A DNA stretch of 64,000 nt, from IMG/VR virus record IMGVR_UViG_3300050132_000038, positions 124,001 through 188,000 of that record, one strand, 5' to 3'. Positions 36,373 through 48,473 of this stretch are shown one piece after another. Position 1 is the first letter of the stretch. Each line of letters starts with the position of its first letter. Made by a program: the position numbers and the translations under genes. Below the pieces are notes generated by a model. It had not been told where the DNA came from, made no database searches, and saw nothing but the letters and a program-made list of their open reading frames with translations.

Positions 36373-38247
36373 ATGTTTGCCAGATCTCAAATCGTAGGTG
36401 TCAACGGAGGGGCTATCAGTTATGCTAACGGGGGCGACAGCGCTCCCTTAGCATCGACTACAACCCGCGGATTCGCCCAGAAGCAAAAGATTACGGCTAG
36501 TGTGGGCGCAGGGTACGGCTCTGGTGGTGGTTCCTCCATGAGTATTAACTCATTCTACCAATCAAGTTATCAATATTACCTTACCGGAATCCTCCCAGCC
36601 GATCCTCACCTTATAGACACATCGACACTGGCGCTGTTTTATCGTGACATCTATCTGTTCGACAGTACAGCTGGTTCAGCTGTAGATATCCAATCTAGCT
36701 TTCCATTCTCTGGGTGGGAACTACGTGGTCTACCAGAAGACGAACTTCAACCGTTCAACACTGCATTAGAGCGTTTGAATCTTCAAACCATGATGCCGTT
36801 TCTTAGTACTGCCTACCTTACTGACGGCTTTTTCTGCGGCTCTCTAATCTTTGATCCACGATCTAAAGAGTTCATCGACACGTTAATTCACGATGCGCTG
36901 TCAGTAGCTGCCATTCCCTCCCCGTTCTTCAACATTGATCCGACAATCAACGTTCGGGTGGGTCAAGCAGCACAGCAGTTCATGCACGATACGTCAGAGT
37001 ATGCACGGCGTTACCTGGATGCAATGCCGAAGGACTTCATCGAGATGCTGAAGAGCGGAGCATTTACCCTAGACCCTGTTACCACGCTATTCATTCCTCG
37101 GCGTAGTACAACAGATCGGGCGTACACCTCATGGCTACATCGTATTCTTCCAATATACATGATTGAGAAGACGCTGTTCCGTGGAACACTAGTTGAAGCA
37201 CAGCGTCGCCAACGTGCTATGACTCATGTTACAGCAGGTGATGATACGTGGACGCCTAGCCCCCAGGAGCTGAATGCCTTAATTGGTGCATTCCAACAGG
37301 CTGAGATGGATCCTATGGGTGGTTGGATTGCTACTAGAGGTTCTGTTGCATCTAATGATTTGAGACCTGGAGGTGACTTCTGGAAGTTTACAGATATGGC
37401 GGATGTGCTTGTTCCCTACAAGCTGCGGGCTCTGGGTATCAGTGAAGGCTTCTTGTCCGGAGATGCCAGCTATGGGGTGGCCGAGTCTGCTTACTCTACT
37501 TTCCTAGAGAGCATGAATTCCTACCGGACTGGTTTAACTGAGAGAGTATTCTACTCCAAACTGTTCCCATTGATTGCAGTAGTAAATGATCTGTACAAAG
37601 ACGGAGCTGATAAGGCGAAGGCAGGTAAGATCGTAGAGTTCTTATTCAACAAGAGTAATCGTAGTAACCTGAAGATGCCTGAACTCCATTGGCACAAGGA
37701 GCTGGAAGCTAAGGGCGAAGAGAACATGGCAGAACTCTTGGAGACTGCTAGTCAGAAGGGCGTGCCAATTCCACTAAAGATGTGGATGGCAGCAGCGAAA
37801 ATTGATCCTGATTTGCTCCTACGTGAGCTATCGGAAGACGCGGCTCTACGCAAGGAGCTAGAGCAATTCACTGGTAAAGATACTTCACATGAAGGGGAGG
37901 AAGAAAGCCATGAATTTGATGATGACTACCAAGGTGCAGGAGACGTTCGTAATGAAACTACTGCAGGACTAGGTAAGATTATTCGCGGCCTACCTACACA
38001 ATCTTTAGTACACGGTCATCCTTCGTACAAGCAACCACTGTTGGCCCGTGAATTCGGAGACTCAGGTGATAACTTTGCACTTACCAAGACGGGTAAGATT
38101 AAGTATGTTCCTAACAGTAGGAACTTAAACAAGCAGATGAATGATAACATCTTGAAGATTGCAGCTAAGGCCGATAAGGATCCTAACTATCGTGCAGAGT
38201 TGAAGAAACGTAATCAAGAAAAACTTGGGCGCACGACCCTTCGTTAA
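36373..38247 (+). CDS. Portal protein
   Basis: 624 aa, downstream of terminase; portal-like segments (YRDIY...AVDI; KLRALGISEGFL). Confidence 0.65.
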   Translation: MFARSQIVGVNGGAISYANGGDSAPLASTTTRGFAQKQKITASVGAGYGSGGGSSMSINSFYQSSYQYYLTGILPADPHLIDTSTLALFYRDIYLFDSTAGSAVDIQSSFPFSGWELRGLPEDELQPFNTALERLNLQTMMPFLSTAYLTDGFFCGSLIFDPRSKEFIDTLIHDALSVAAIPSPFFNIDPTINVRVGQAAQQFMHDTSEYARRYLDAMPKDFIEMLKSGAFTLDPVTTLFIPRRSTTDRAYTSWLHRILPIYMIEKTLFRGTLVEAQRRQRAMTHVTAGDDTWTPSPQELNALIGAFQQAEMDPMGGWIATRGSVASNDLRPGGDFWKFTDMADVLVPYKLRALGISEGFLSGDASYGVAESAYSTFLESMNSYRTGLTERVFYSKLFPLIAVVNDLYKDGADKAKAGKIVEFLFNKSNRSNLKMPELHWHKELEAKGEENMAELLETASQKGVPIPLKMWMAAAKIDPDLLLRELSEDAALRKELEQFTGKDTSHEGEEESHEFDDDYQGAGDVRNETTAGLGKIIRGLPTQSLVHGHPSYKQPLLAREFGDSGDNFALTKTGKIKYVPNSRNLNKQMNDNILKIAAKADKDPNYRAELKKRNQEKLGRTTLR

Positions 38248-38542: not shown

Positions 38543-39360
38543 ATGAGCTCTACAGTTGTTAGTCTCCAACCCAAGAAAGGATTTAAGCCTCAGTACTTTG
38601 GTGTAGTCTTCGACGCATACAACCCCCAGGTAGAAGCGCAGATGATGCGTGACTGCTTGGCAATGCAGAGGGTACTTCAAAATCATAAGCGCGAGCTAGT
38701 TATTGTGTGTGAGTCTGAAGCCCCTGACCGTATGCTCCGGGGTTTAAGTATTCGTAGAGTACCTACGCCTACGCTAACAAAGTCCTGGGCGATGTACAAG
38801 ACGAAAGCCGACTGGATGCCCGAACCAGAAGGTGCTGACGTGGTTGTACCCCGTGATCTGTATCAACCACTGAAGAAGAATACACTTCGAGTATTAGACG
38901 AGGCACACACTAATGGGTACTATTTACCGCCTTTGGAAACATTCCTTAGGGCCGCTTGACCGTGAGGTCATGTGATAAGGTTTTGAATTGTCTGGAAACT
39001 CCTTAGAGCCGTGTAGACCACAACGTAGCTATGAAATATGGGCAAGCGTGAGGGTTAAGAACTATACGGATTGGGCAACCAGCAGCGAAGTCCCGAATAG
39101 GGAAACGTTCAACGACTAGAGCGCAAGCTCGTACCCTCAAGTGAGGGGAAGCGGAACCCGTCTCTGTGAGACGAAGATATAGTCTGACCGTCTAGGGAAA
39201 TCCTAGAGCAGTTCATAAGAGAACGCTTGAGTACTAACGACACTCAGGGAACACAGTGCAAGGAAGATTGAGTCCAGAAACAGTTTCACTACTTAGACCA
39301 GCACCTAATGGTTTTTCTGTAGGCTACGGTGATAACTGGTTGAGCGCGCTCTATAGTTAG
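38543..39360 (+). CDS. Hypothetical protein interrupted by a group I intron (exon 1 to ~38947-38957, exon 2 ~39259-39360)
   Basis: Exon 1 reading frame stops at the intron edge; downstream frame QGRLSPETVSLLRPAPNGFSVGYGDNWLSALYS* can be joined in frame. Confidence 0.6.
38957..39258 (+). mobile_element. ORF-less group I intron, subgroup IA-like (boundaries approximate)
   Basis: P AATTGTCTGGAAA; Q AACCAGCAGC; R GTTCAACGACTAG; S AAGATATAGTC; P7 GACTA/TAGTC; P3 GGTTTT/GGAACC; P7.1, P7.2, P8 and P9 hairpins. Confidence 0.88.
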
Positions 39361-39383
39361 GGTCGAACACCCTACAATTTCAC

Positions 39384-39451
39384 AGTGAGCATAAAGCGAA
39401 AAGGTTTAGCGGCCCTGTCATGCCAATACATGACTAGCTTTATGTCTCACT
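39384..39451 (+). ncRNA. Structured leader (three-way junction), copy 1, upstream of endonuclease 1
   Basis: AGTGAG-CATAAAGC/GCTTTATG-T-CTCACT; GTCATG/CATGAC; conserved at 47315..47386. Confidence 0.65.
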
Positions 39452-39475
39452 TCTTAAACCTATTGGGGTTGCCAA

Positions 39476-40582
39476 ATGTCTTCATCTAAAGAGCATACTT
39501 ATGCTTTCCGTGTGCCATCGTCCTCACTTTTCGATAAAGCACTCACCAAATTAGTAAAACAAGTAGAGACGAAGGCTGCCTCTACTGACTCCGAGCTCGA
39601 CCCAGATCCAATCTACTATGTGTACGTACTGCTTGATCCACGAAAACCTGGAGCATTTGAGTACACACTTCCCGGTAGCAAGCTAATCGCTTTTAAGTAT
39701 CAACCCTTCTACGTGGGTAAGGGTAAAGGCGACAGGCTGAAGACTCATGTGAAGTCTACTCGTAAGCGTGTGGCTAGGGGTCGGAAGCTCACACATAAAG
39801 AAAACACGATTAAGAAGATCGAAAGTTTGGGTCTTAAAGTAATTGAGAAGCGTATAAGTTTCGACCTCCCTGAGGCAGTATCATTTGCCAAAGAGATAAT
39901 GTTAATCTCCACAATTGGTAGAGTCGATCTGGGTACAGGATTACTTACTAATTGGTCAGGCGGCGGTGAGGGCGTTATAGATTTATCCCCTGAGACGATT
40001 CGGAAACATAGTGAATCGCAGAAGGCCGTACGTGCTGCGTTAACTCCTAAGCAAAATGCAAAGCGTAATAAGCTCACCAGCGAAAGCGTAGCAGCTGAGT
40101 GGAAAGCTAGATCACCTGACGCTAAGAAAGTCCACGCACAGAAGACCATTGCCCAGATGGAAGCACTAACGGATAAAGAGCGGCGACAACTTACTGCCCC
40201 TGCCCGTAAAGCATACAAGAAAGTTCTAGATTCCCTAACTGATGAAGAGCGCAACAAGCTATTAGGTAGTGGATCTAAAGCTTGGTGGGCCTCTATGACA
40301 GACGAGGAACGAGAGTCACAGAACAAGAAGGCAGGTACTGCTCTGAGTAAGAGTCTACAGGCGAGATCCCCTGAGGCAAAAGCCAAGCACTATAACAATC
40401 AGCGTAACGCGCAGCTAGCTCGAATAGCTAATATGACTCCGGAAGAGCGGGAAGCTGAACGAGCACGAAAGCGCGCCCAACTTGACGCGCTACCTATACA
40501 GCAGTGTCCTCACTGTGGATATGAGGGTAAGGGGCCTAACATGAAGAAGTATCATTTTGATAGATGCAAGTATAAGTCTTAA
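39476..40582 (+). CDS. Free-standing GIY-YIG-family homing endonuclease
   Basis: YYVYVLLDPRKP...PFYVGKG.G.R...H; LTN; helical repeats; C-terminal CPHC...YHFDRC. Confidence 0.75.
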   Translation: MSSSKEHTYAFRVPSSSLFDKALTKLVKQVETKAASTDSELDPDPIYYVYVLLDPRKPGAFEYTLPGSKLIAFKYQPFYVGKGKGDRLKTHVKSTRKRVARGRKLTHKENTIKKIESLGLKVIEKRISFDLPEAVSFAKEIMLISTIGRVDLGTGLLTNWSGGGEGVIDLSPETIRKHSESQKAVRAALTPKQNAKRNKLTSESVAAEWKARSPDAKKVHAQKTIAQMEALTDKERRQLTAPARKAYKKVLDSLTDEERNKLLGSGSKAWWASMTDEERESQNKKAGTALSKSLQARSPEAKAKHYNNQRNAQLARIANMTPEEREAERARKRAQLDALPIQQCPHCGYEGKGPNMKKYHFDRCKYKS

Positions 40583-40604: not shown

Positions 40605-40886
40605 ATGGCAATGTTCCGCAAGAAGCCTGTCGTAGTAGAAGCCATTACCTTTGATGAACTAGTAGCGTATGGTATAGACTCAGGTGCAACTATTGTCGAT
40701 AGAATGCCTTGGTCGTTCCGATACAACGGTCACCCTATTACTCACGAGAACGACAACTGCTATTTGATCCTTACCTTAGAAGGTACTATGAACTTCACTA
40801 GGGAGGATATGCTAATCACCGGTGTTCAAGGTGAGATATACCCGTGTAAGCTCGACATCTTCAACGCTACATACGAGCCCACCTAA
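40605..40886 (+). CDS. Common phage protein (PGDYG-like domain)
   Basis: FRKKPVVVEA...TLEG.M...GVQGEIYPCK.DIF..TYE; TAAGGAG RBS. Confidence 0.75.
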   Translation: MAMFRKKPVVVEAITFDELVAYGIDSGATIVDRMPWSFRYNGHPITHENDNCYLILTLEGTMNFTREDMLITGVQGEIYPCKLDIFNATYEPT

Positions 40887-40895
40887 GGAGAAATC

Positions 40896-41150
40896 ATGTC
40901 CCTAAAACTAAAGGCGGCGTCAAGACTGTTAGCTGCGGAGTACACGGGTGGCATTTCAGTAGGTGACTTCGTTGAGGTCGTTCCGCAGGTTCATGGTAGG
41001 ACTTACGGTCGGGTGCGTGAGATCAAAGGTGACAGATTGGTGATCCTCCTAGCTGATAGCAAGTCTAATCTCCGCTTCGGTCATGGGGTAGTAGAGGAGA
41101 TCCCCCGTGCACAATGTACCCGAGTCAATGTCACTGACCTCCCAAGTTAA
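40896..41150 (+). CDS. Small beta-barrel (SH3/KOW-like) protein
   Basis: ISVGDFVEV...GRVREIKGD. Confidence 0.55.
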   Translation: MSLKLKAASRLLAAEYTGGISVGDFVEVVPQVHGRTYGRVREIKGDRLVILLADSKSNLRFGHGVVEEIPRAQCTRVNVTDLPS

Positions 41151-47288: not shown

Positions 47289-47314
47289 ACAACTTGCTAC
47301 CCTGTCAATTTAAT

Positions 47315-47386
47315 AGTGAGCATAGAGCGAAAGGGCCGGCCAGCCTCCGTCAGATCCATATCATCTGACTAGCTTTATGTTTCACT
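47315..47386 (+). ncRNA. Structured leader (three-way junction), copy 2, upstream of endonuclease 2
   Basis: AGTGAG-CATAGAGC/GCTTTATG-T-TTCACT; GTCAGAT/ATCTGAC (compensatory relative to copy 1). Confidence 0.65.
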
Positions 47387-47411
47387 TCTTAAATCGATAT
47401 GGGGTTGTCAA

Positions 47412-48473
47412 ATGTCCACGAACTACCAGGAGCTCGCTGAGCTCTACTTCCACGAGTACGACCAAAATTCCCTTGAAGACCCGTATGAAAAGAAGCGGCG
47501 CAAAGTCTTTAAAGAATTAGCAGCCGCTATAATAACCTCGGAATTCCCAGAGCTAGAAGCTCAGATCGCAATAGCTGCCTGGAACTTAACCGCAGAGTTA
47601 GCCGTTACTGGTAACAAAGGTAAAGGACGTAGACTTAAGTTAGATAAAATCTTCTACGTGTACGTTCTTATGGATCCCCGTAAGCCAGGCCAGTGGATTA
47701 TAGATCTCCCAGGTGGGAAAATTATTGAGCTTCCTTTCCTACCTTTCTACGTAGGAAAAGGGTACGGTGGTAGAATGAAGGCACACGCCCGACACGCCAG
47801 AGCTAAGCCCACTCCTGTAGCAGGTGAGCATAAAGCTAACACTATTCGTAGTCTTCATCGCCTTGGCCTAGAACCTATAGAGAAACGAGTCAGTGGATTC
47901 TCTATAGAGGCCGTAGCACTAATGAAGGAAGTGGGGTTAGTGAAAGCTGTTGGTCGTGGTAGGAATGGACCACTTACTAATCTTAGTGACGCCGGGGAGG
48001 GCCTAAGCGGCTACAAGCCCACTGAGGAAACTAAAGCTAAAATAGCTGCTAAGCTAGATCAGATCGTAGCCAAAAGAAAAGCTACCTATGCGGGCAAGAG
48101 TCAAGAAGAGTTAGACGCTATCAACGAGAAGAATAGCCTAGCGCATCGTGGTAAGAAACAGAGTGTTGAAACACTTGAGAAGCGAGTAGCACAATTACGT
48201 GGTACCACCCGCCCGACGGAAGTAGGTACTAAAATTAGTGCTTCTAAGATGGGGCATGAGACCTCAGTAGAAACACGGGCAAAGCAGAGCGCTGCAAAGA
48301 AAGGTCGACCGGCGCTCAATAAGGGTACTACTCATACTGAGGAAACTAAAGCTAAGATGCGCGCAGCTAAAGCTGCTCAGCCTATAAAAATTTGTGAGCA
48401 CTGTGGCACAGAAAGTAAAGGTACTGCCTTTACTAGATGGCATGGTGACAACTGTAAGTTTAAGAAGGATTAG
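47412..48473 (+). CDS. Free-standing GIY-YIG homing endonuclease with NUMOD3-like repeats
   Basis: FYVYVLMDPRKP...PFYVGKG; KGTTHTEETKAKM-type repeats; C-terminal CEHC...WHGDNC. Confidence 0.8.
   Translation: MSTNYQELAELYFHEYDQNSLEDPYEKKRRKVFKELAAAIITSEFPELEAQIAIAAWNLTAELAVTGNKGKGRRLKLDKIFYVYVLMDPRKPGQWIIDLPGGKIIELPFLPFYVGKGYGGRMKAHARHARAKPTPVAGEHKANTIRSLHRLGLEPIEKRVSGFSIEAVALMKEVGLVKAVGRGRNGPLTNLSDAGEGLSGYKPTEETKAKIAAKLDQIVAKRKATYAGKSQEELDAINEKNSLAHRGKKQSVETLEKRVAQLRGTTRPTEVGTKISASKMGHETSVETRAKQSAAKKGRPALNKGTTHTEETKAKMRAAKAAQPIKICEHCGTESKGTAFTRWHGDNCKFKKD

What the first reader, a model, noticed from the sequence alone, without database searches (positions are those of the whole stretch)
38948..40582. 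ORF-less group I intron in an uncharacterised gene, next to a free-standing endonuclease (collaborative-homing layout)
Seen: a full group I core (P, Q, R, S, P3, P4, P6, P7, P7.1, P7.2, P8, P9) directly after the apparent stop of 38543..38959. A 33-codon frame (39259..39360) can be joined in phase, for example ...FLRAA|QGRLSPET... or ...FL|QGRL...; exact splice sites could not be fixed by eye. The GIY-YIG gene starts 116 nt after exon 2. Established: phage introns usually sit in DNA-metabolism or other conserved genes, and intron plus adjacent free-standing nuclease is the collaborative-homing arrangement (for example cyanophage S-PM2 psbA/F-CphI). Inference: the host gene is conserved and important, and the nuclease cuts intron-less alleles.
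Basis: partly seen in the sequence, partly recalled or inferred. Interest (0 to 1): 0.74.

Follow-up and report, generated by a model that had tools for sequence, protein, structure and literature searches.

The report
Phage intron with neighbouring homing nuclease
A 326-base self-splicing group I intron interrupts a conserved gene of unknown function in an uncultivated 219-kb jumbo phage from peat, and a free-standing GIY-YIG nuclease gene lies just downstream; comparison with relatives suggests the two move together, a known but rarely documented arrangement.

Summary
Rfam finds one group I intron in the window and in the whole 218,861-bp phage genome (65.3 bits, cut-off 50).

Exon 1 ends at U38932 (…NGYYLPP), the intron is 38933..39258 and ends in G, and exon 2 is 39259..39360 (QGRLSPET…). 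The "stop" at 38957 lies inside the intron.

The host gene is a 163-aa protein conserved in RSL1/BcepSauron-like jumbo phages, between the portal and tail-tube genes. It has no known family or fold match.

In relatives, ORF-less introns sit at four sites within 54 nt of this gene's conserved 3' end. Five of seven intron-bearing lineages that could be scored have a GIY-YIG gene 13-115 nt after the stop. None of 24 intron-less lineages does.

A near-identical phage pair differs by exactly one block: the last ~16 nt of exon 1, the intron, a recoded exon 2 and the nuclease gene.

The collaborative (trans) homing layout is therefore well supported by comparison. Splicing and nuclease specificity remain untested, because no RNA data were listed. 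I file it as a new member of a known kind.

The parts
38543..38932 (+). Exon 1 of the host gene (130 codons, ends ...NGYYLPP; last base U38932 forms the U.G pair of P1)
   Evidence: Intron-less homologues continue ...YYLPPQGRLSP.... The intron-less allele L053 is 96% identical in protein.
38933..39258 (+). Group I intron, 326 nt, with no nuclease ORF. It has P7.1 and P7.2 (IA-like) and ends in G39258.
   Evidence: Rfam RF00028 65.3 bits. U at -1 and G at the 3' end, as in 7 related introns. 43 of 75 pairs compensatory. Helices verified.
38929..38952 (+). P1: exon/intron GCCU|U (38929-38933) pairs with the guide AGGGC (38948-38952), with U38932.G38949 at the splice site. An inner hairpin is GGAA/UUCC (38935-38945). 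CCUU (38944-38947) can pair with AAGG (39260-39263) of exon 2 as P10.
   Evidence: Complementarity check, all pairs standard. Introns at the other sites carry guides matching their own exons (read by eye).
38957..38959 (+). TGA that ends the annotated 138-aa ORF. It lies inside the intron, so it would stop translation only of unspliced RNA.
38979..39184 (+). Catalytic core. P3 38979-85/39152-58; P4 38989-95/39079-84; P5 39001-05/39071-75; P6 39085-86/39107-08; P7 39114-18/39180-84; P7.1 39119-30 (GCAA loop); P7.2 39134-47; P8 39159-73.
39191..39248 (+). Peripheral 3' helices: P9 (39191-39207), P9.1 (39211-39224), P9.2 (39226-39248).
39259..39360 (+). Exon 2 (33 codons QGRLSPETVSLLRPAPNGFSVGYGDNWLSALYS plus TAG).
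   Evidence: L053 has the same lineage-specific ...SVGYG continuation in one uninterrupted frame.
39361..39475 (+). Conserved leader of the nuclease gene, with a small hairpin GTCATG...CATGAC at 39417-39434.
   Evidence: It aligns with the region upstream of the second GIY-YIG gene (47290-47411) and of the GIY genes in L045, L015 and L057. No Rfam match.
39476..40582 (+). Free-standing GIY-YIG endonuclease gene (368 aa): nuclease domain at residues 47-152, helical repeats, then a C-terminal CxxC...HxxxC motif.
   Evidence: PF22945 E 1.7e-11. Y48, Y50, Y79, G81, R87, H91, E140 and N159 are invariant in 9 homologues. The gene is absent at this position from intron-less relatives L047 and L050.

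Best explanation
**What it is.** The window comes from an uncultivated RSL1/BcepSauron-like jumbo myovirus. Its 163-aa morphogenesis-module gene is split by a self-splicing group I intron (38933..39258).

**Splicing (inferred).** After transcription the ribozyme pairs its guide AGGGC with the exon end GCCU. It cuts after U38932, then after its terminal G39258, and joins ...CCGCCU to CAAGGA.... This restores the conserved tail ...GYYLPP-QGRLSPETVSLLRPAPNG....

**Homing (inferred).**
- The GIY-YIG gene 115 nt downstream is a free-standing homing endonuclease.
- In a mixed infection it most likely cuts the uninterrupted, conserved 3' end of this gene in phages that lack the cassette.
- Repair from the donor genome then copies a block: the end of exon 1, the intron, exon 2 and the nuclease gene.
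- The intron splits the target in the donor and so protects it. Having no nuclease of its own, the intron is carried along.
- This is collaborative (trans) homing.

**Shown.** The intron's identity and exact ends, conservation of its structure, presence/absence polymorphism, co-occurrence with the nuclease, the block replacement, and an intact catalytic motif.

**Inferred.** Splicing activity, the nuclease's target, and the protection given by the intron.
For: **Intron.**

**Junction.** Intron-less homologues read ...YYLPPQGRLSP.... L053, 96% identical in protein, is uninterrupted.

**Eight intron-bearing lineages at four phase-0 sites** (0, +18, +48 and +54 nt). Every one has U before the intron and G at its end.

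**Co-occurrence.**
- A GIY-YIG gene lies 13-115 nt after the stop in the window, L045, L015, L018 and L023. L055 probably has one too.
- None of 24 intron-less lineages has one there. Fisher one-sided p = 1e-4; p = 0.002 if L013 and L026, whose nucleases lie further away, are counted.

**Block replacement.**
- L045 (intron and nuclease) against L049 (neither) shows 3 mismatches in the first 477 nt.
- It then shows 5 mismatches in the last 16 nt of exon 1.
- Exon 2 has 26 of 96 nt different but only 1 amino-acid change.
- The DNA downstream is unrelated.

**Other support.**
- L050 has the window's gene order minus the intron and the nuclease.
- Third-position GC in the 26 codons around the intron sites falls to 0.15-0.19 in the window, L045 and L015, against 0.48-0.64 in the rest of the gene. 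Intron-less alleles show no drop (Mann-Whitney p = 0.005).
- The GIY-YIG catalytic residues are invariant.
- Collaborative and trans homing are established (PMC3984707, PMC2790892, PMC6083498).
Against: - No RNA run was listed, so splicing is not observed.
- The cleavage specificity is unknown.
- Two intron lineages lack the nuclease (L001-L004; L051).
- The same nuclease family also sits elsewhere without introns. Examples are L013 (a clean 747-bp insertion about 860 nt downstream), L057, L015 upstream of the portal gene, and two further paralogues in this genome.
- The nucleases next to the site-A introns of the window and of L045 are only 35% identical, and the nuclease tree is unresolved. 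The pairing of intron and nuclease is therefore not a stable single cassette over long times.
- Introns at different sites are no more alike (63-79%) than they are to other phage introns (about 73%).
- The lineage counts are not corrected for phylogeny.
Confidence: 0.6

Rival explanations
1. The two are independent selfish elements in a recombination hot spot. The intron is real, but the GIY-YIG enzyme homes on its own ('intronless homing') to a target outside the intron region, such as the variable space between this gene and the tail-tube gene. The two lie side by side only because this junction accumulates cargo.
For: The space between the host gene and the tube gene is variable. It holds p419 and p84 in the window and L050, another gene in L049, and a 231-aa gene in L010. 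L013 gained a GIY gene with no change in the host gene. The genome has two other GIY paralogues and no other intron. Some introns have no nuclease nearby (L001, L051).
Against: In 5 of the 7 intron-bearing lineages that could be scored (probably a sixth, L055), covering four different insertion sites, the nuclease directly abuts the gene. It does so in 0 of 24 intron-less lineages. The L045/L049 breakpoint lies inside exon 1, just upstream of the intron site, not in the intergenic space. Synonymous recoding is centred on the intron region.
Confidence: 0.22
2. Nuclease turnover. The intron once carried its own internal nuclease gene and homed by itself. That ORF was lost, and an unrelated free-standing GIY-YIG gene later landed next door. 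The present neighbourhood is a historical remnant, not a working partnership.
For: This was proposed as an alternative for such layouts (bioRxiv 10.1101/2023.03.23.533998). The nucleases beside orthologous site-A introns are very divergent (35% identity; three types in the window, L045 and L055). One metagenome run (X4) holds contigs identical to the window's exon 1 end, spacer and nuclease 3' end, beside a variant intron.
Against: All 8 introns found are 310-343 nt, and none shows a remnant of an internal ORF. Turnover does not exclude present-day trans homing; it concerns origin more than mechanism.
Confidence: 0.12
3. The intron is inactive, and the gene is truncated to the 138-aa product ending LETFLRAA.
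For: Gene callers predict 138-aa proteins in several metagenomes (P0001, P0002, P0005, P0006). No RNA evidence is available.
Against: Exon 2 remains an intact frame encoding the tail motif (QGR…RPAPNG), which has several nearly invariant residues. Intron helices are kept by compensatory changes in 43 of 75 pairs. The guide sequence, the U.G pair and the terminal G are all in place.
Confidence: 0.04

Closest known systems
Cyanophage S-PM2 psbA intron with free-standing F-CphI (collaborative homing; Zeng, Bonocora and Shub 2009, as cited in PMC3984707; PMC6083498)
   Same: [quoted passage not shown] The published case shows that the nuclease target coincides with the intron insertion site.
   Different: F-CphI uses an Endo VII-type (DHHRN) catalytic motif, whereas this enzyme is GIY-YIG. 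The host gene here is an uncharacterised morphogenesis-module gene of a jumbo myovirus. Cleavage is not demonstrated here. Relatives here carry introns at four neighbouring sites.
T7-like phages (T3, PhiI, W31): DNA polymerase intron with a free-standing HNH endonuclease (Bonocora and Shub 2009, cited in PMC3984707 and)
   Same: A free-standing nuclease and an ORF-less intron converge on one conserved site. It was proposed as a route to composite mobile introns.
   Different: The nuclease family is HNH. No relative with the nuclease ORF inside the intron was found here.
Phage T4 mobE and the nrdB intron with defunct I-TevIII (trans homing, PMC2790892)
   Same: An intron unable to move by itself is mobilised through gene conversion started by a neighbouring free-standing nuclease. 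Sequence polymorphisms in progeny mark the recombination point.
   Different: MobE is an HNH nickase, and the T4 intron still holds a dead nuclease ORF. Here the introns have no ORF, and the evidence is comparative only.
Vibrio phage ICP1 large-terminase intron with an adjacent T5orf172 nuclease gene (bioRxiv 10.1101/2023.03.23.533998 / PMC10448857)
   Same: An intron in a morphogenesis or packaging gene with the nuclease gene beside it rather than inside. Nuclease genes mark the boundaries of genetic exchange.
   Different: The nuclease domain and the host gene differ.
T4 td intron with I-TevI (classical mobile group IA2 intron with an internal GIY-YIG enzyme); B. cereus-group nrdE with introns at three sites (PMC2248736)
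   Same: The same intron class (P7.1/P7.2) and the same nuclease superfamily. As in nrdE, several insertion sites cluster in one conserved gene.
   Different: The nuclease here is outside the intron. Its DNA-binding part (helical repeats plus a CxxC...HxxxC motif) is not the I-TevI architecture as far as was tested; only the second paralogue matches NUMOD3.

Membership tests
Group I intron (Rfam RF00028) | Covariance-model score above the curated gathering score | tested here: met
   65.3 bits against 50, covering the full model 1-253. Related introns score 77-97 bits.
Group I intron (Rfam RF00028) | Conserved core helices P3-P8 maintained by covariation | tested here: met
   43 of 75 pairs compensatory in 8 introns. 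Helices verified in the window. P7 never varies, so it gives no information.
Group I intron (Rfam RF00028) | U.G pair at the 5' splice site within P1 formed with an internal guide; terminal G at the 3' end; possible P10 | tested here: met
   U38932.G38949, G39258, and P10 CCUU/AAGG. All 8 introns at the four sites have U before and G at the end.
Group I intron (Rfam RF00028) | Removal restores a conserved open reading frame | tested here: met
   The junction YYLPP|QGRLSPET matches the uninterrupted genes L053, L049, L050, L047, RSL1 ORF209 and others.
Group I intron (Rfam RF00028) | Guanosine-dependent self-splicing, or spliced RNA in vivo | not testable with these tools
   No RNA run was listed for this sequence.
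Subgroup IA2 (phage-type) | Extra helices P7.1 and P7.2 between P7 and P3' | tested here: met
   P7.1 39119-39130 and P7.2 39134-39147. Formal subgroup assignment was not run; the nearest DNA matches are other phage introns.
GIY-YIG homing endonuclease | GIY-YIG catalytic domain with the conserved Tyr, Tyr, Arg, His, Glu and Asn | tested here: met
   PF22945 E 1.7e-11. Y48, Y50, Y79, R87, H91, E140 and N159 are invariant in 9 homologues.
GIY-YIG homing endonuclease | Separate C-terminal DNA-binding module | tested here: inconclusive
   Helical repeats and a conserved CPHCG...HFDxCK motif are present. This protein has no Pfam DNA-binding hit; only the paralogue at 47412..48473 matches NUMOD3.
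GIY-YIG homing endonuclease | Presence/absence polymorphism among close relatives (mobility) | tested here: met
   Absent at this place in L047, L050 and L049. L013 differs from L010 (99.9% identical) by a clean 747-bp insertion of a family member.
GIY-YIG homing endonuclease | Site-specific cleavage of the allele that lacks it | not testable with these tools
   Requires enzyme assays.
Collaborative / trans homing arrangement | ORF-less intron plus a free-standing nuclease gene beside the interrupted gene | tested here: met
   The same layout occurs in L045, L015, L018 and L023.
Collaborative / trans homing arrangement | Intron and nuclease are inherited together; flanking exon sequence is co-converted | tested here: met
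   Association 5 of 7 against 0 of 24. The L045/L049 block replacement has its breakpoint between -128 and -16 nt from the intron site. The association is not universal (L001, L051).
Collaborative / trans homing arrangement | [quoted passage not shown] | not testable with these tools
   Only indirect support: four insertion sites within 54 nt, and AT-rich synonymous recoding of that stretch in nuclease-bearing genomes.

The most novel reading that the evidence does not exclude
The conserved 26-codon tail of this gene may be a contested landing pad. On this reading a diversifying family of free-standing GIY-YIG nucleases attacks it. Phages have then repeatedly and independently fixed ORF-less introns at different positions (0, +18, +48, +54 nt), and recoded the stretch synonymously, as protection against cleavage. 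Introns would thus be recruited as target-site disruptors in a contest between competing phages, with nucleases and intron variants being exchanged independently of each other.
Probability: 0.3. Interest if true: 0.7.

Novelty: new member of a known kind. Interest (0 to 1): 0.5.

Why it matters
Experimentally studied cases of an ORF-less intron working with a neighbouring free-standing nuclease are few (S-PM2, T3/T7-like phages, T4 mobE). The layout has also been noted in ICP1. These cases are central to ideas on how mobile introns arise.

This locus adds a GIY-YIG example in RSL1-like jumbo phages, together with the natural intermediates:
- intron only;
- nuclease only;
- both together;
- neither;
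- four insertion sites;
- variant introns on what look like identical flanks.

The idea can therefore be tested with a few synthetic substrates.

There is also a practical point. Gene callers truncate this conserved gene to 138 aa in several metagenomes, and the correct product is 163 aa.

Tried and rejected
**RNA evidence.** Two searches for sequencing runs listed only DNA metagenomes. Laying contigs of four DNA runs showed no intron-less joint.

**Host protein function.**
- No Pfam or PHROG family and no PDB sequence match.
- The AlphaFold2 model has pLDDT 85: an alpha/beta domain at residues 15-105 plus an extended tail.
- It gave only background matches to Rossmann-like folds, such as USP, SLOG and the NAD kinase N-domain (Foldseek E at least 0.005; VIA Z at most 7.6).
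- The Atlas feature search gave weak glycosyltransferase-like leads (0.86). I do not rely on them.
- Pfam found nothing in eight family members longer than usual.

**Common origin of the introns.** Core identities of 63-79% are no higher than to unrelated phage introns, so neither a single origin nor transposition between sites can be claimed.

**Shared donor for the recoded exon stretch.** Pairwise identities of 55-85% show no intron-specific cluster.

**Nuclease tree.** It has no well-supported clade of intron-adjacent enzymes.

**Leader element.** An exact-pattern scan of viral contigs found only contigs already known. It has no Rfam match.

**Insert in the portal gene of L001.** No Rfam match, and one Pfam call failed on frame.

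**Promoter/terminator scan.** Nothing above chance around the locus.

**Complex prediction.** Complex prediction was not used: no protein-protein claim is made, and jobs with DNA get no verdict.
Full report
**Observation**

Rfam's group I intron model matches window 38933..39206 on the + strand at 65.3 bits (curated cut-off 50, E 2.5e-14). It is the only Rfam hit in the 64-kb window. The window is bases 124001-188000 of a 218,861-bp virus record with direct terminal repeats, and the intron is the only group I match in that genome. The ORFs inside the intron are chance frames of 43-45 aa, so it carries no nuclease gene. I checked P1, P2, P3, P4, P5, P6/6a, P7, P7.1, P7.2, P8, P9, P9.1 and P9.2 base by base.

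**Splice sites**

The annotated ORF 38543..38959 gives a 138-aa protein ending LETFLRAA. A protein search found homologues of two kinds:
- some also end ...YYLPP-LETFLRAA or similar;
- others are about 161 aa and continue ...NGYYLPP-QGRLSPDT(V/I)SLLRPAPNGY....

The window's downstream frame 39259..39360 begins QGRLSPETVSLLRPAPNG. The junction is therefore after codon 130 (CCT ending at 38932) and before CAA at 39259, which makes the intron 38933..39258 (326 nt) in phase 0.

The base before it is U and its last base is G, as group I chemistry requires. The guide AGGGC (38948-52) pairs with GCCU|U (38929-33), with a U.G pair at the splice site. CCUU (38944-47) can pair with AAGG at the start of exon 2 as P10.

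A metagenome contig, L053, encodes a protein 96% identical to the window's. It runs straight through the junction, including the lineage-specific ...NGYSVGYG continuation.

The 'stop' TGA at 38957 lies inside the intron. Homologues ending in FLRAA carry the same intron (L045), so they do not refute it.

**Is the ribozyme maintained?**

I collected eight related introns from relatives of this phage:

| Locus | Insertion site |
|---|---|
| window | A |
| L045 | A |
| L055 | A |
| L001 | A |
| L051 | A |
| L015 | B |
| L018 | C |
| L023 | D |

Four of them (L001, L015, L018 and L023) were scanned with Rfam and scored 77-97 bits. In their alignment 43 of 75 predicted pairs keep pairing through changes on both sides, covering P2, P3, P5, P6, P7.1, P7.2, P8, P9 and P9.2. 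This is strong evidence for selection on the fold. It is not evidence of splicing in this phage: no RNA run was listed.

**The host gene**

- It lies in a morphogenesis module: large terminase, RuvC-like resolvase, portal 36373..38247, a KMPT-N protein, this gene, then tail-tube-like and baseplate-hub-like genes.
- The order portal, KMPT-N, gene, tube, hub is kept in 41 IMG/VR loci.
- Named relatives are Ralstonia phage RSL1 (ORF209), Burkholderia phages BcepSauron (gp252), BcepSaruman and BCSR5, and Achromobacter phage Motura. All annotate it as hypothetical.
- A profile search of 1.8 billion representatives found only 110 members.
- There is no Pfam, PHROG or PDB sequence match.
- An AlphaFold2 model of an intron-less homologue (pLDDT 85) shows a confident three-layer alpha/beta domain (residues 15-105) and an extended, less confident C-terminal tail. 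The tail carries the conserved GYYLPPQGR...RPAPNGY motif.
- Fold searches gave only background Rossmann-like matches.

The gene is conserved, but its function remains unknown. My guess is that the tail is a binding peptide for another virion or assembly protein. This is inference only.

**A cluster of insertion sites**

In relatives the intron is not always at the same place:

| Site | Position (after …) | Offset from A in the spliced gene | Loci |
|---|---|---|---|
| A | ...YYLPP | 0 | window, L045, L055, L001, L051 |
| B | QGRLSP | +18 nt | L015/L016 |
| C | ...RPAP | +48 nt | L018 |
| D | ...RPAPNG | +54 nt | L023 |

All insertions are in phase 0, with U before the intron and G at its end. 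Each intron carries a guide that matches its own exon. All are 310-343 nt and have no internal ORF. Their cores are 63-79% identical. That is no closer than to other phage introns (about 73% to Streptococcus phage Str-PAP-1), so I cannot say whether they share one origin.

**The nuclease**

ORF 39476..40582 has a GIY-YIG domain (PF22945, E 1.7e-11). The catalytic Tyr, Tyr, Arg, His, Glu and Asn are invariant among nine homologues. The domain is followed by helical repeats and a conserved CPHCG...HFDxCK motif. The genome holds two more paralogues, at window 47412..48473 and at about 209 kb, but no other intron.

**Link between intron and nuclease**

*Co-occurrence.* Among lineages where the downstream DNA is available:
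- A GIY-YIG gene starts 13-115 nt after the host gene's stop in the window, L045, L015, L018 and L023.
- L055 probably has one too: its downstream ORF begins like the window's second paralogue before the contig ends.
- No such gene is present in the intron-bearing L001 and L051.
- None of 24 intron-less lineages has one in that position.
- L013 and L026 have family members 500-860 nt away.
- Fisher one-sided p is 1e-4, or 0.002 if L013 and L026 are counted.
- These counts are not corrected for shared ancestry. However, the five positives cover four different insertion sites, so they are at least four separate events.

*Block replacement.* The sharpest evidence is a near-identical pair, L045 (intron and nuclease) and L049 (neither):
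- They differ at 3 of the first 477 aligned bases.
- They then differ at 5 of the last 16 bases of exon 1.
- They differ at 26 of 96 bases of exon 2, with only one amino-acid change.
- They are unrelated downstream.

This is what gene conversion started near the intron site would leave behind.

*Gene order.* L050 shows the window's gene order without the intron and without the nuclease gene.

*Recoding.* In the window, L045 and L015, third-position GC of the 26 codons around the intron sites falls to 0.15-0.19, against 0.48-0.64 in the rest of the gene. Intron-less alleles show no such drop (p = 0.005). This points to foreign origin or to selection on that stretch.

**Mechanism**

I therefore favour collaborative (trans) homing, as established for S-PM2 F-CphI, T7-like phages and T4 mobE (PMC3984707, PMC6083498, PMC2790892):
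- The free-standing enzyme cuts the uninterrupted conserved 3' end of the gene in competitors.
- Repair copies the intron, exon 2 and the nuclease gene.
- The intron splits the site in the carrier and so protects it.

Modular GIY-YIG homing enzymes such as I-TevI recognise long, two-part sites and cut at a distance from where they bind. This is from my own knowledge and was not tested here. It would explain how insertions spread over 54 nt could each protect.

**Caveats**

- Splicing and cleavage are untested.
- The nucleases beside the site-A introns of the window and of L045 are only 35% identical, and the nuclease tree is unresolved.
- In one metagenome run (X4), short contigs are identical to the window's exon 1 end, spacer and nuclease 3' end, but they lie beside a variant intron at the same site.

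Introns and nucleases thus seem to be exchanged separately over time. This fits the 'turnover' view as well as it fits a fixed partnership. L013 shows that members of this nuclease family also home without any intron.

**Verdict**

- The mechanism itself remains inference (about 0.6).
- It is a new member of a known kind, and a good natural system for testing how introns and free-standing nucleases come together.

Noticed in passing
window 39361-39475 and 47290-47411; also L045 6866-6890, L015 6821-6845, L057 1605-1629: A conserved leader of about 115 nt precedes GIY-YIG genes whose proteins are only about 35% identical. It contains AATTT.A.AGTGAGCATA (found only at these two places in the window), a hairpin GTCATG...CATGAC with compensatory changes, and GGGGTTGYCAAATG at the start codon. 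It has no Rfam match. It may control nuclease expression, or serve as a recombination anchor for cassette exchange.
   Followed up: partly
window 47412-48473 and genome G000 about 209.2-210.0 kb (L067): Two further free-standing GIY-YIG paralogues are in the same phage. The first has a NUMOD3 motif and sits between the tail lysozyme gene and a PmgG-like gene. Neither is next to an intron.
   Followed up: partly
window 38742-39477 in metagenome run X4: Short contigs are identical to the window in the last 191 nt of exon 1, in 39328-39477 and in the 3' end of the nuclease gene. But they continue after 38932 with a different intron 5' end, and one contig matches the core (39069-39234) with 23 changes and 5 indels. 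This suggests an intron variant swapped on the same backbone, although linkage of these short contigs is not shown.
   Followed up: partly
L038 3773-5263; L001 2505-4931; L017 2139-4011: The portal gene of relatives is interrupted at about residue 366. In L038 the insert is 1491 nt, in frame, without stops, and ends ...VVHN|S (intein-like). In L001 and L017 the inserts are 2427 and 1873 nt, out of frame, with ORFs of 661 and 484 aa. No Rfam intron match was found in L001.
   Followed up: partly
L013 7317-8063 against L010: Two contigs that are 99.9% identical differ by a clean 747-bp insertion carrying a 235-aa GIY-YIG gene just upstream of the tail-tube gene. It is a textbook free-standing nuclease gain or loss with no intron involved.
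   Followed up: yes
L057 1622-3073: A GIY-YIG gene lies between the portal gene and the KMPT-N gene. Its reading frame runs on into KMPT-N, giving a 484-aa ORF.
   Followed up: no
window 38915-39336 (spliced); L045, L015: The 26 codons around the intron sites use almost only A/T-ending codons (GC3 0.15-0.19) in nuclease-bearing genomes, although the protein sequence is unchanged.
   Followed up: partly
window 40605-41150; L050 1251-1864; L049 642-1046: The space between the host gene and the tail-tube gene holds variable cargo. In the window and L050 it holds a phrog_419-like 93-aa protein and an 84-aa protein. L047 has nothing there, L049 has an unrelated gene, and L010 has a 231-aa gene.
   Followed up: partly
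L051 1-765: A 1242-aa gene upstream in the 249-kb relative has faint precomputed hits to intein-splicing and LAGLIDADG families. This is another possible selfish insert in this phage group.
   Followed up: no
P0001, P0002, P0005, P0006, P0010, P0015, P0017: Public gene calls for this family are often truncated, or read on into intron sequence (tails such as LETFLRAA or ...ILNCW...). The intron is not recognised by the gene callers.
   Followed up: yes
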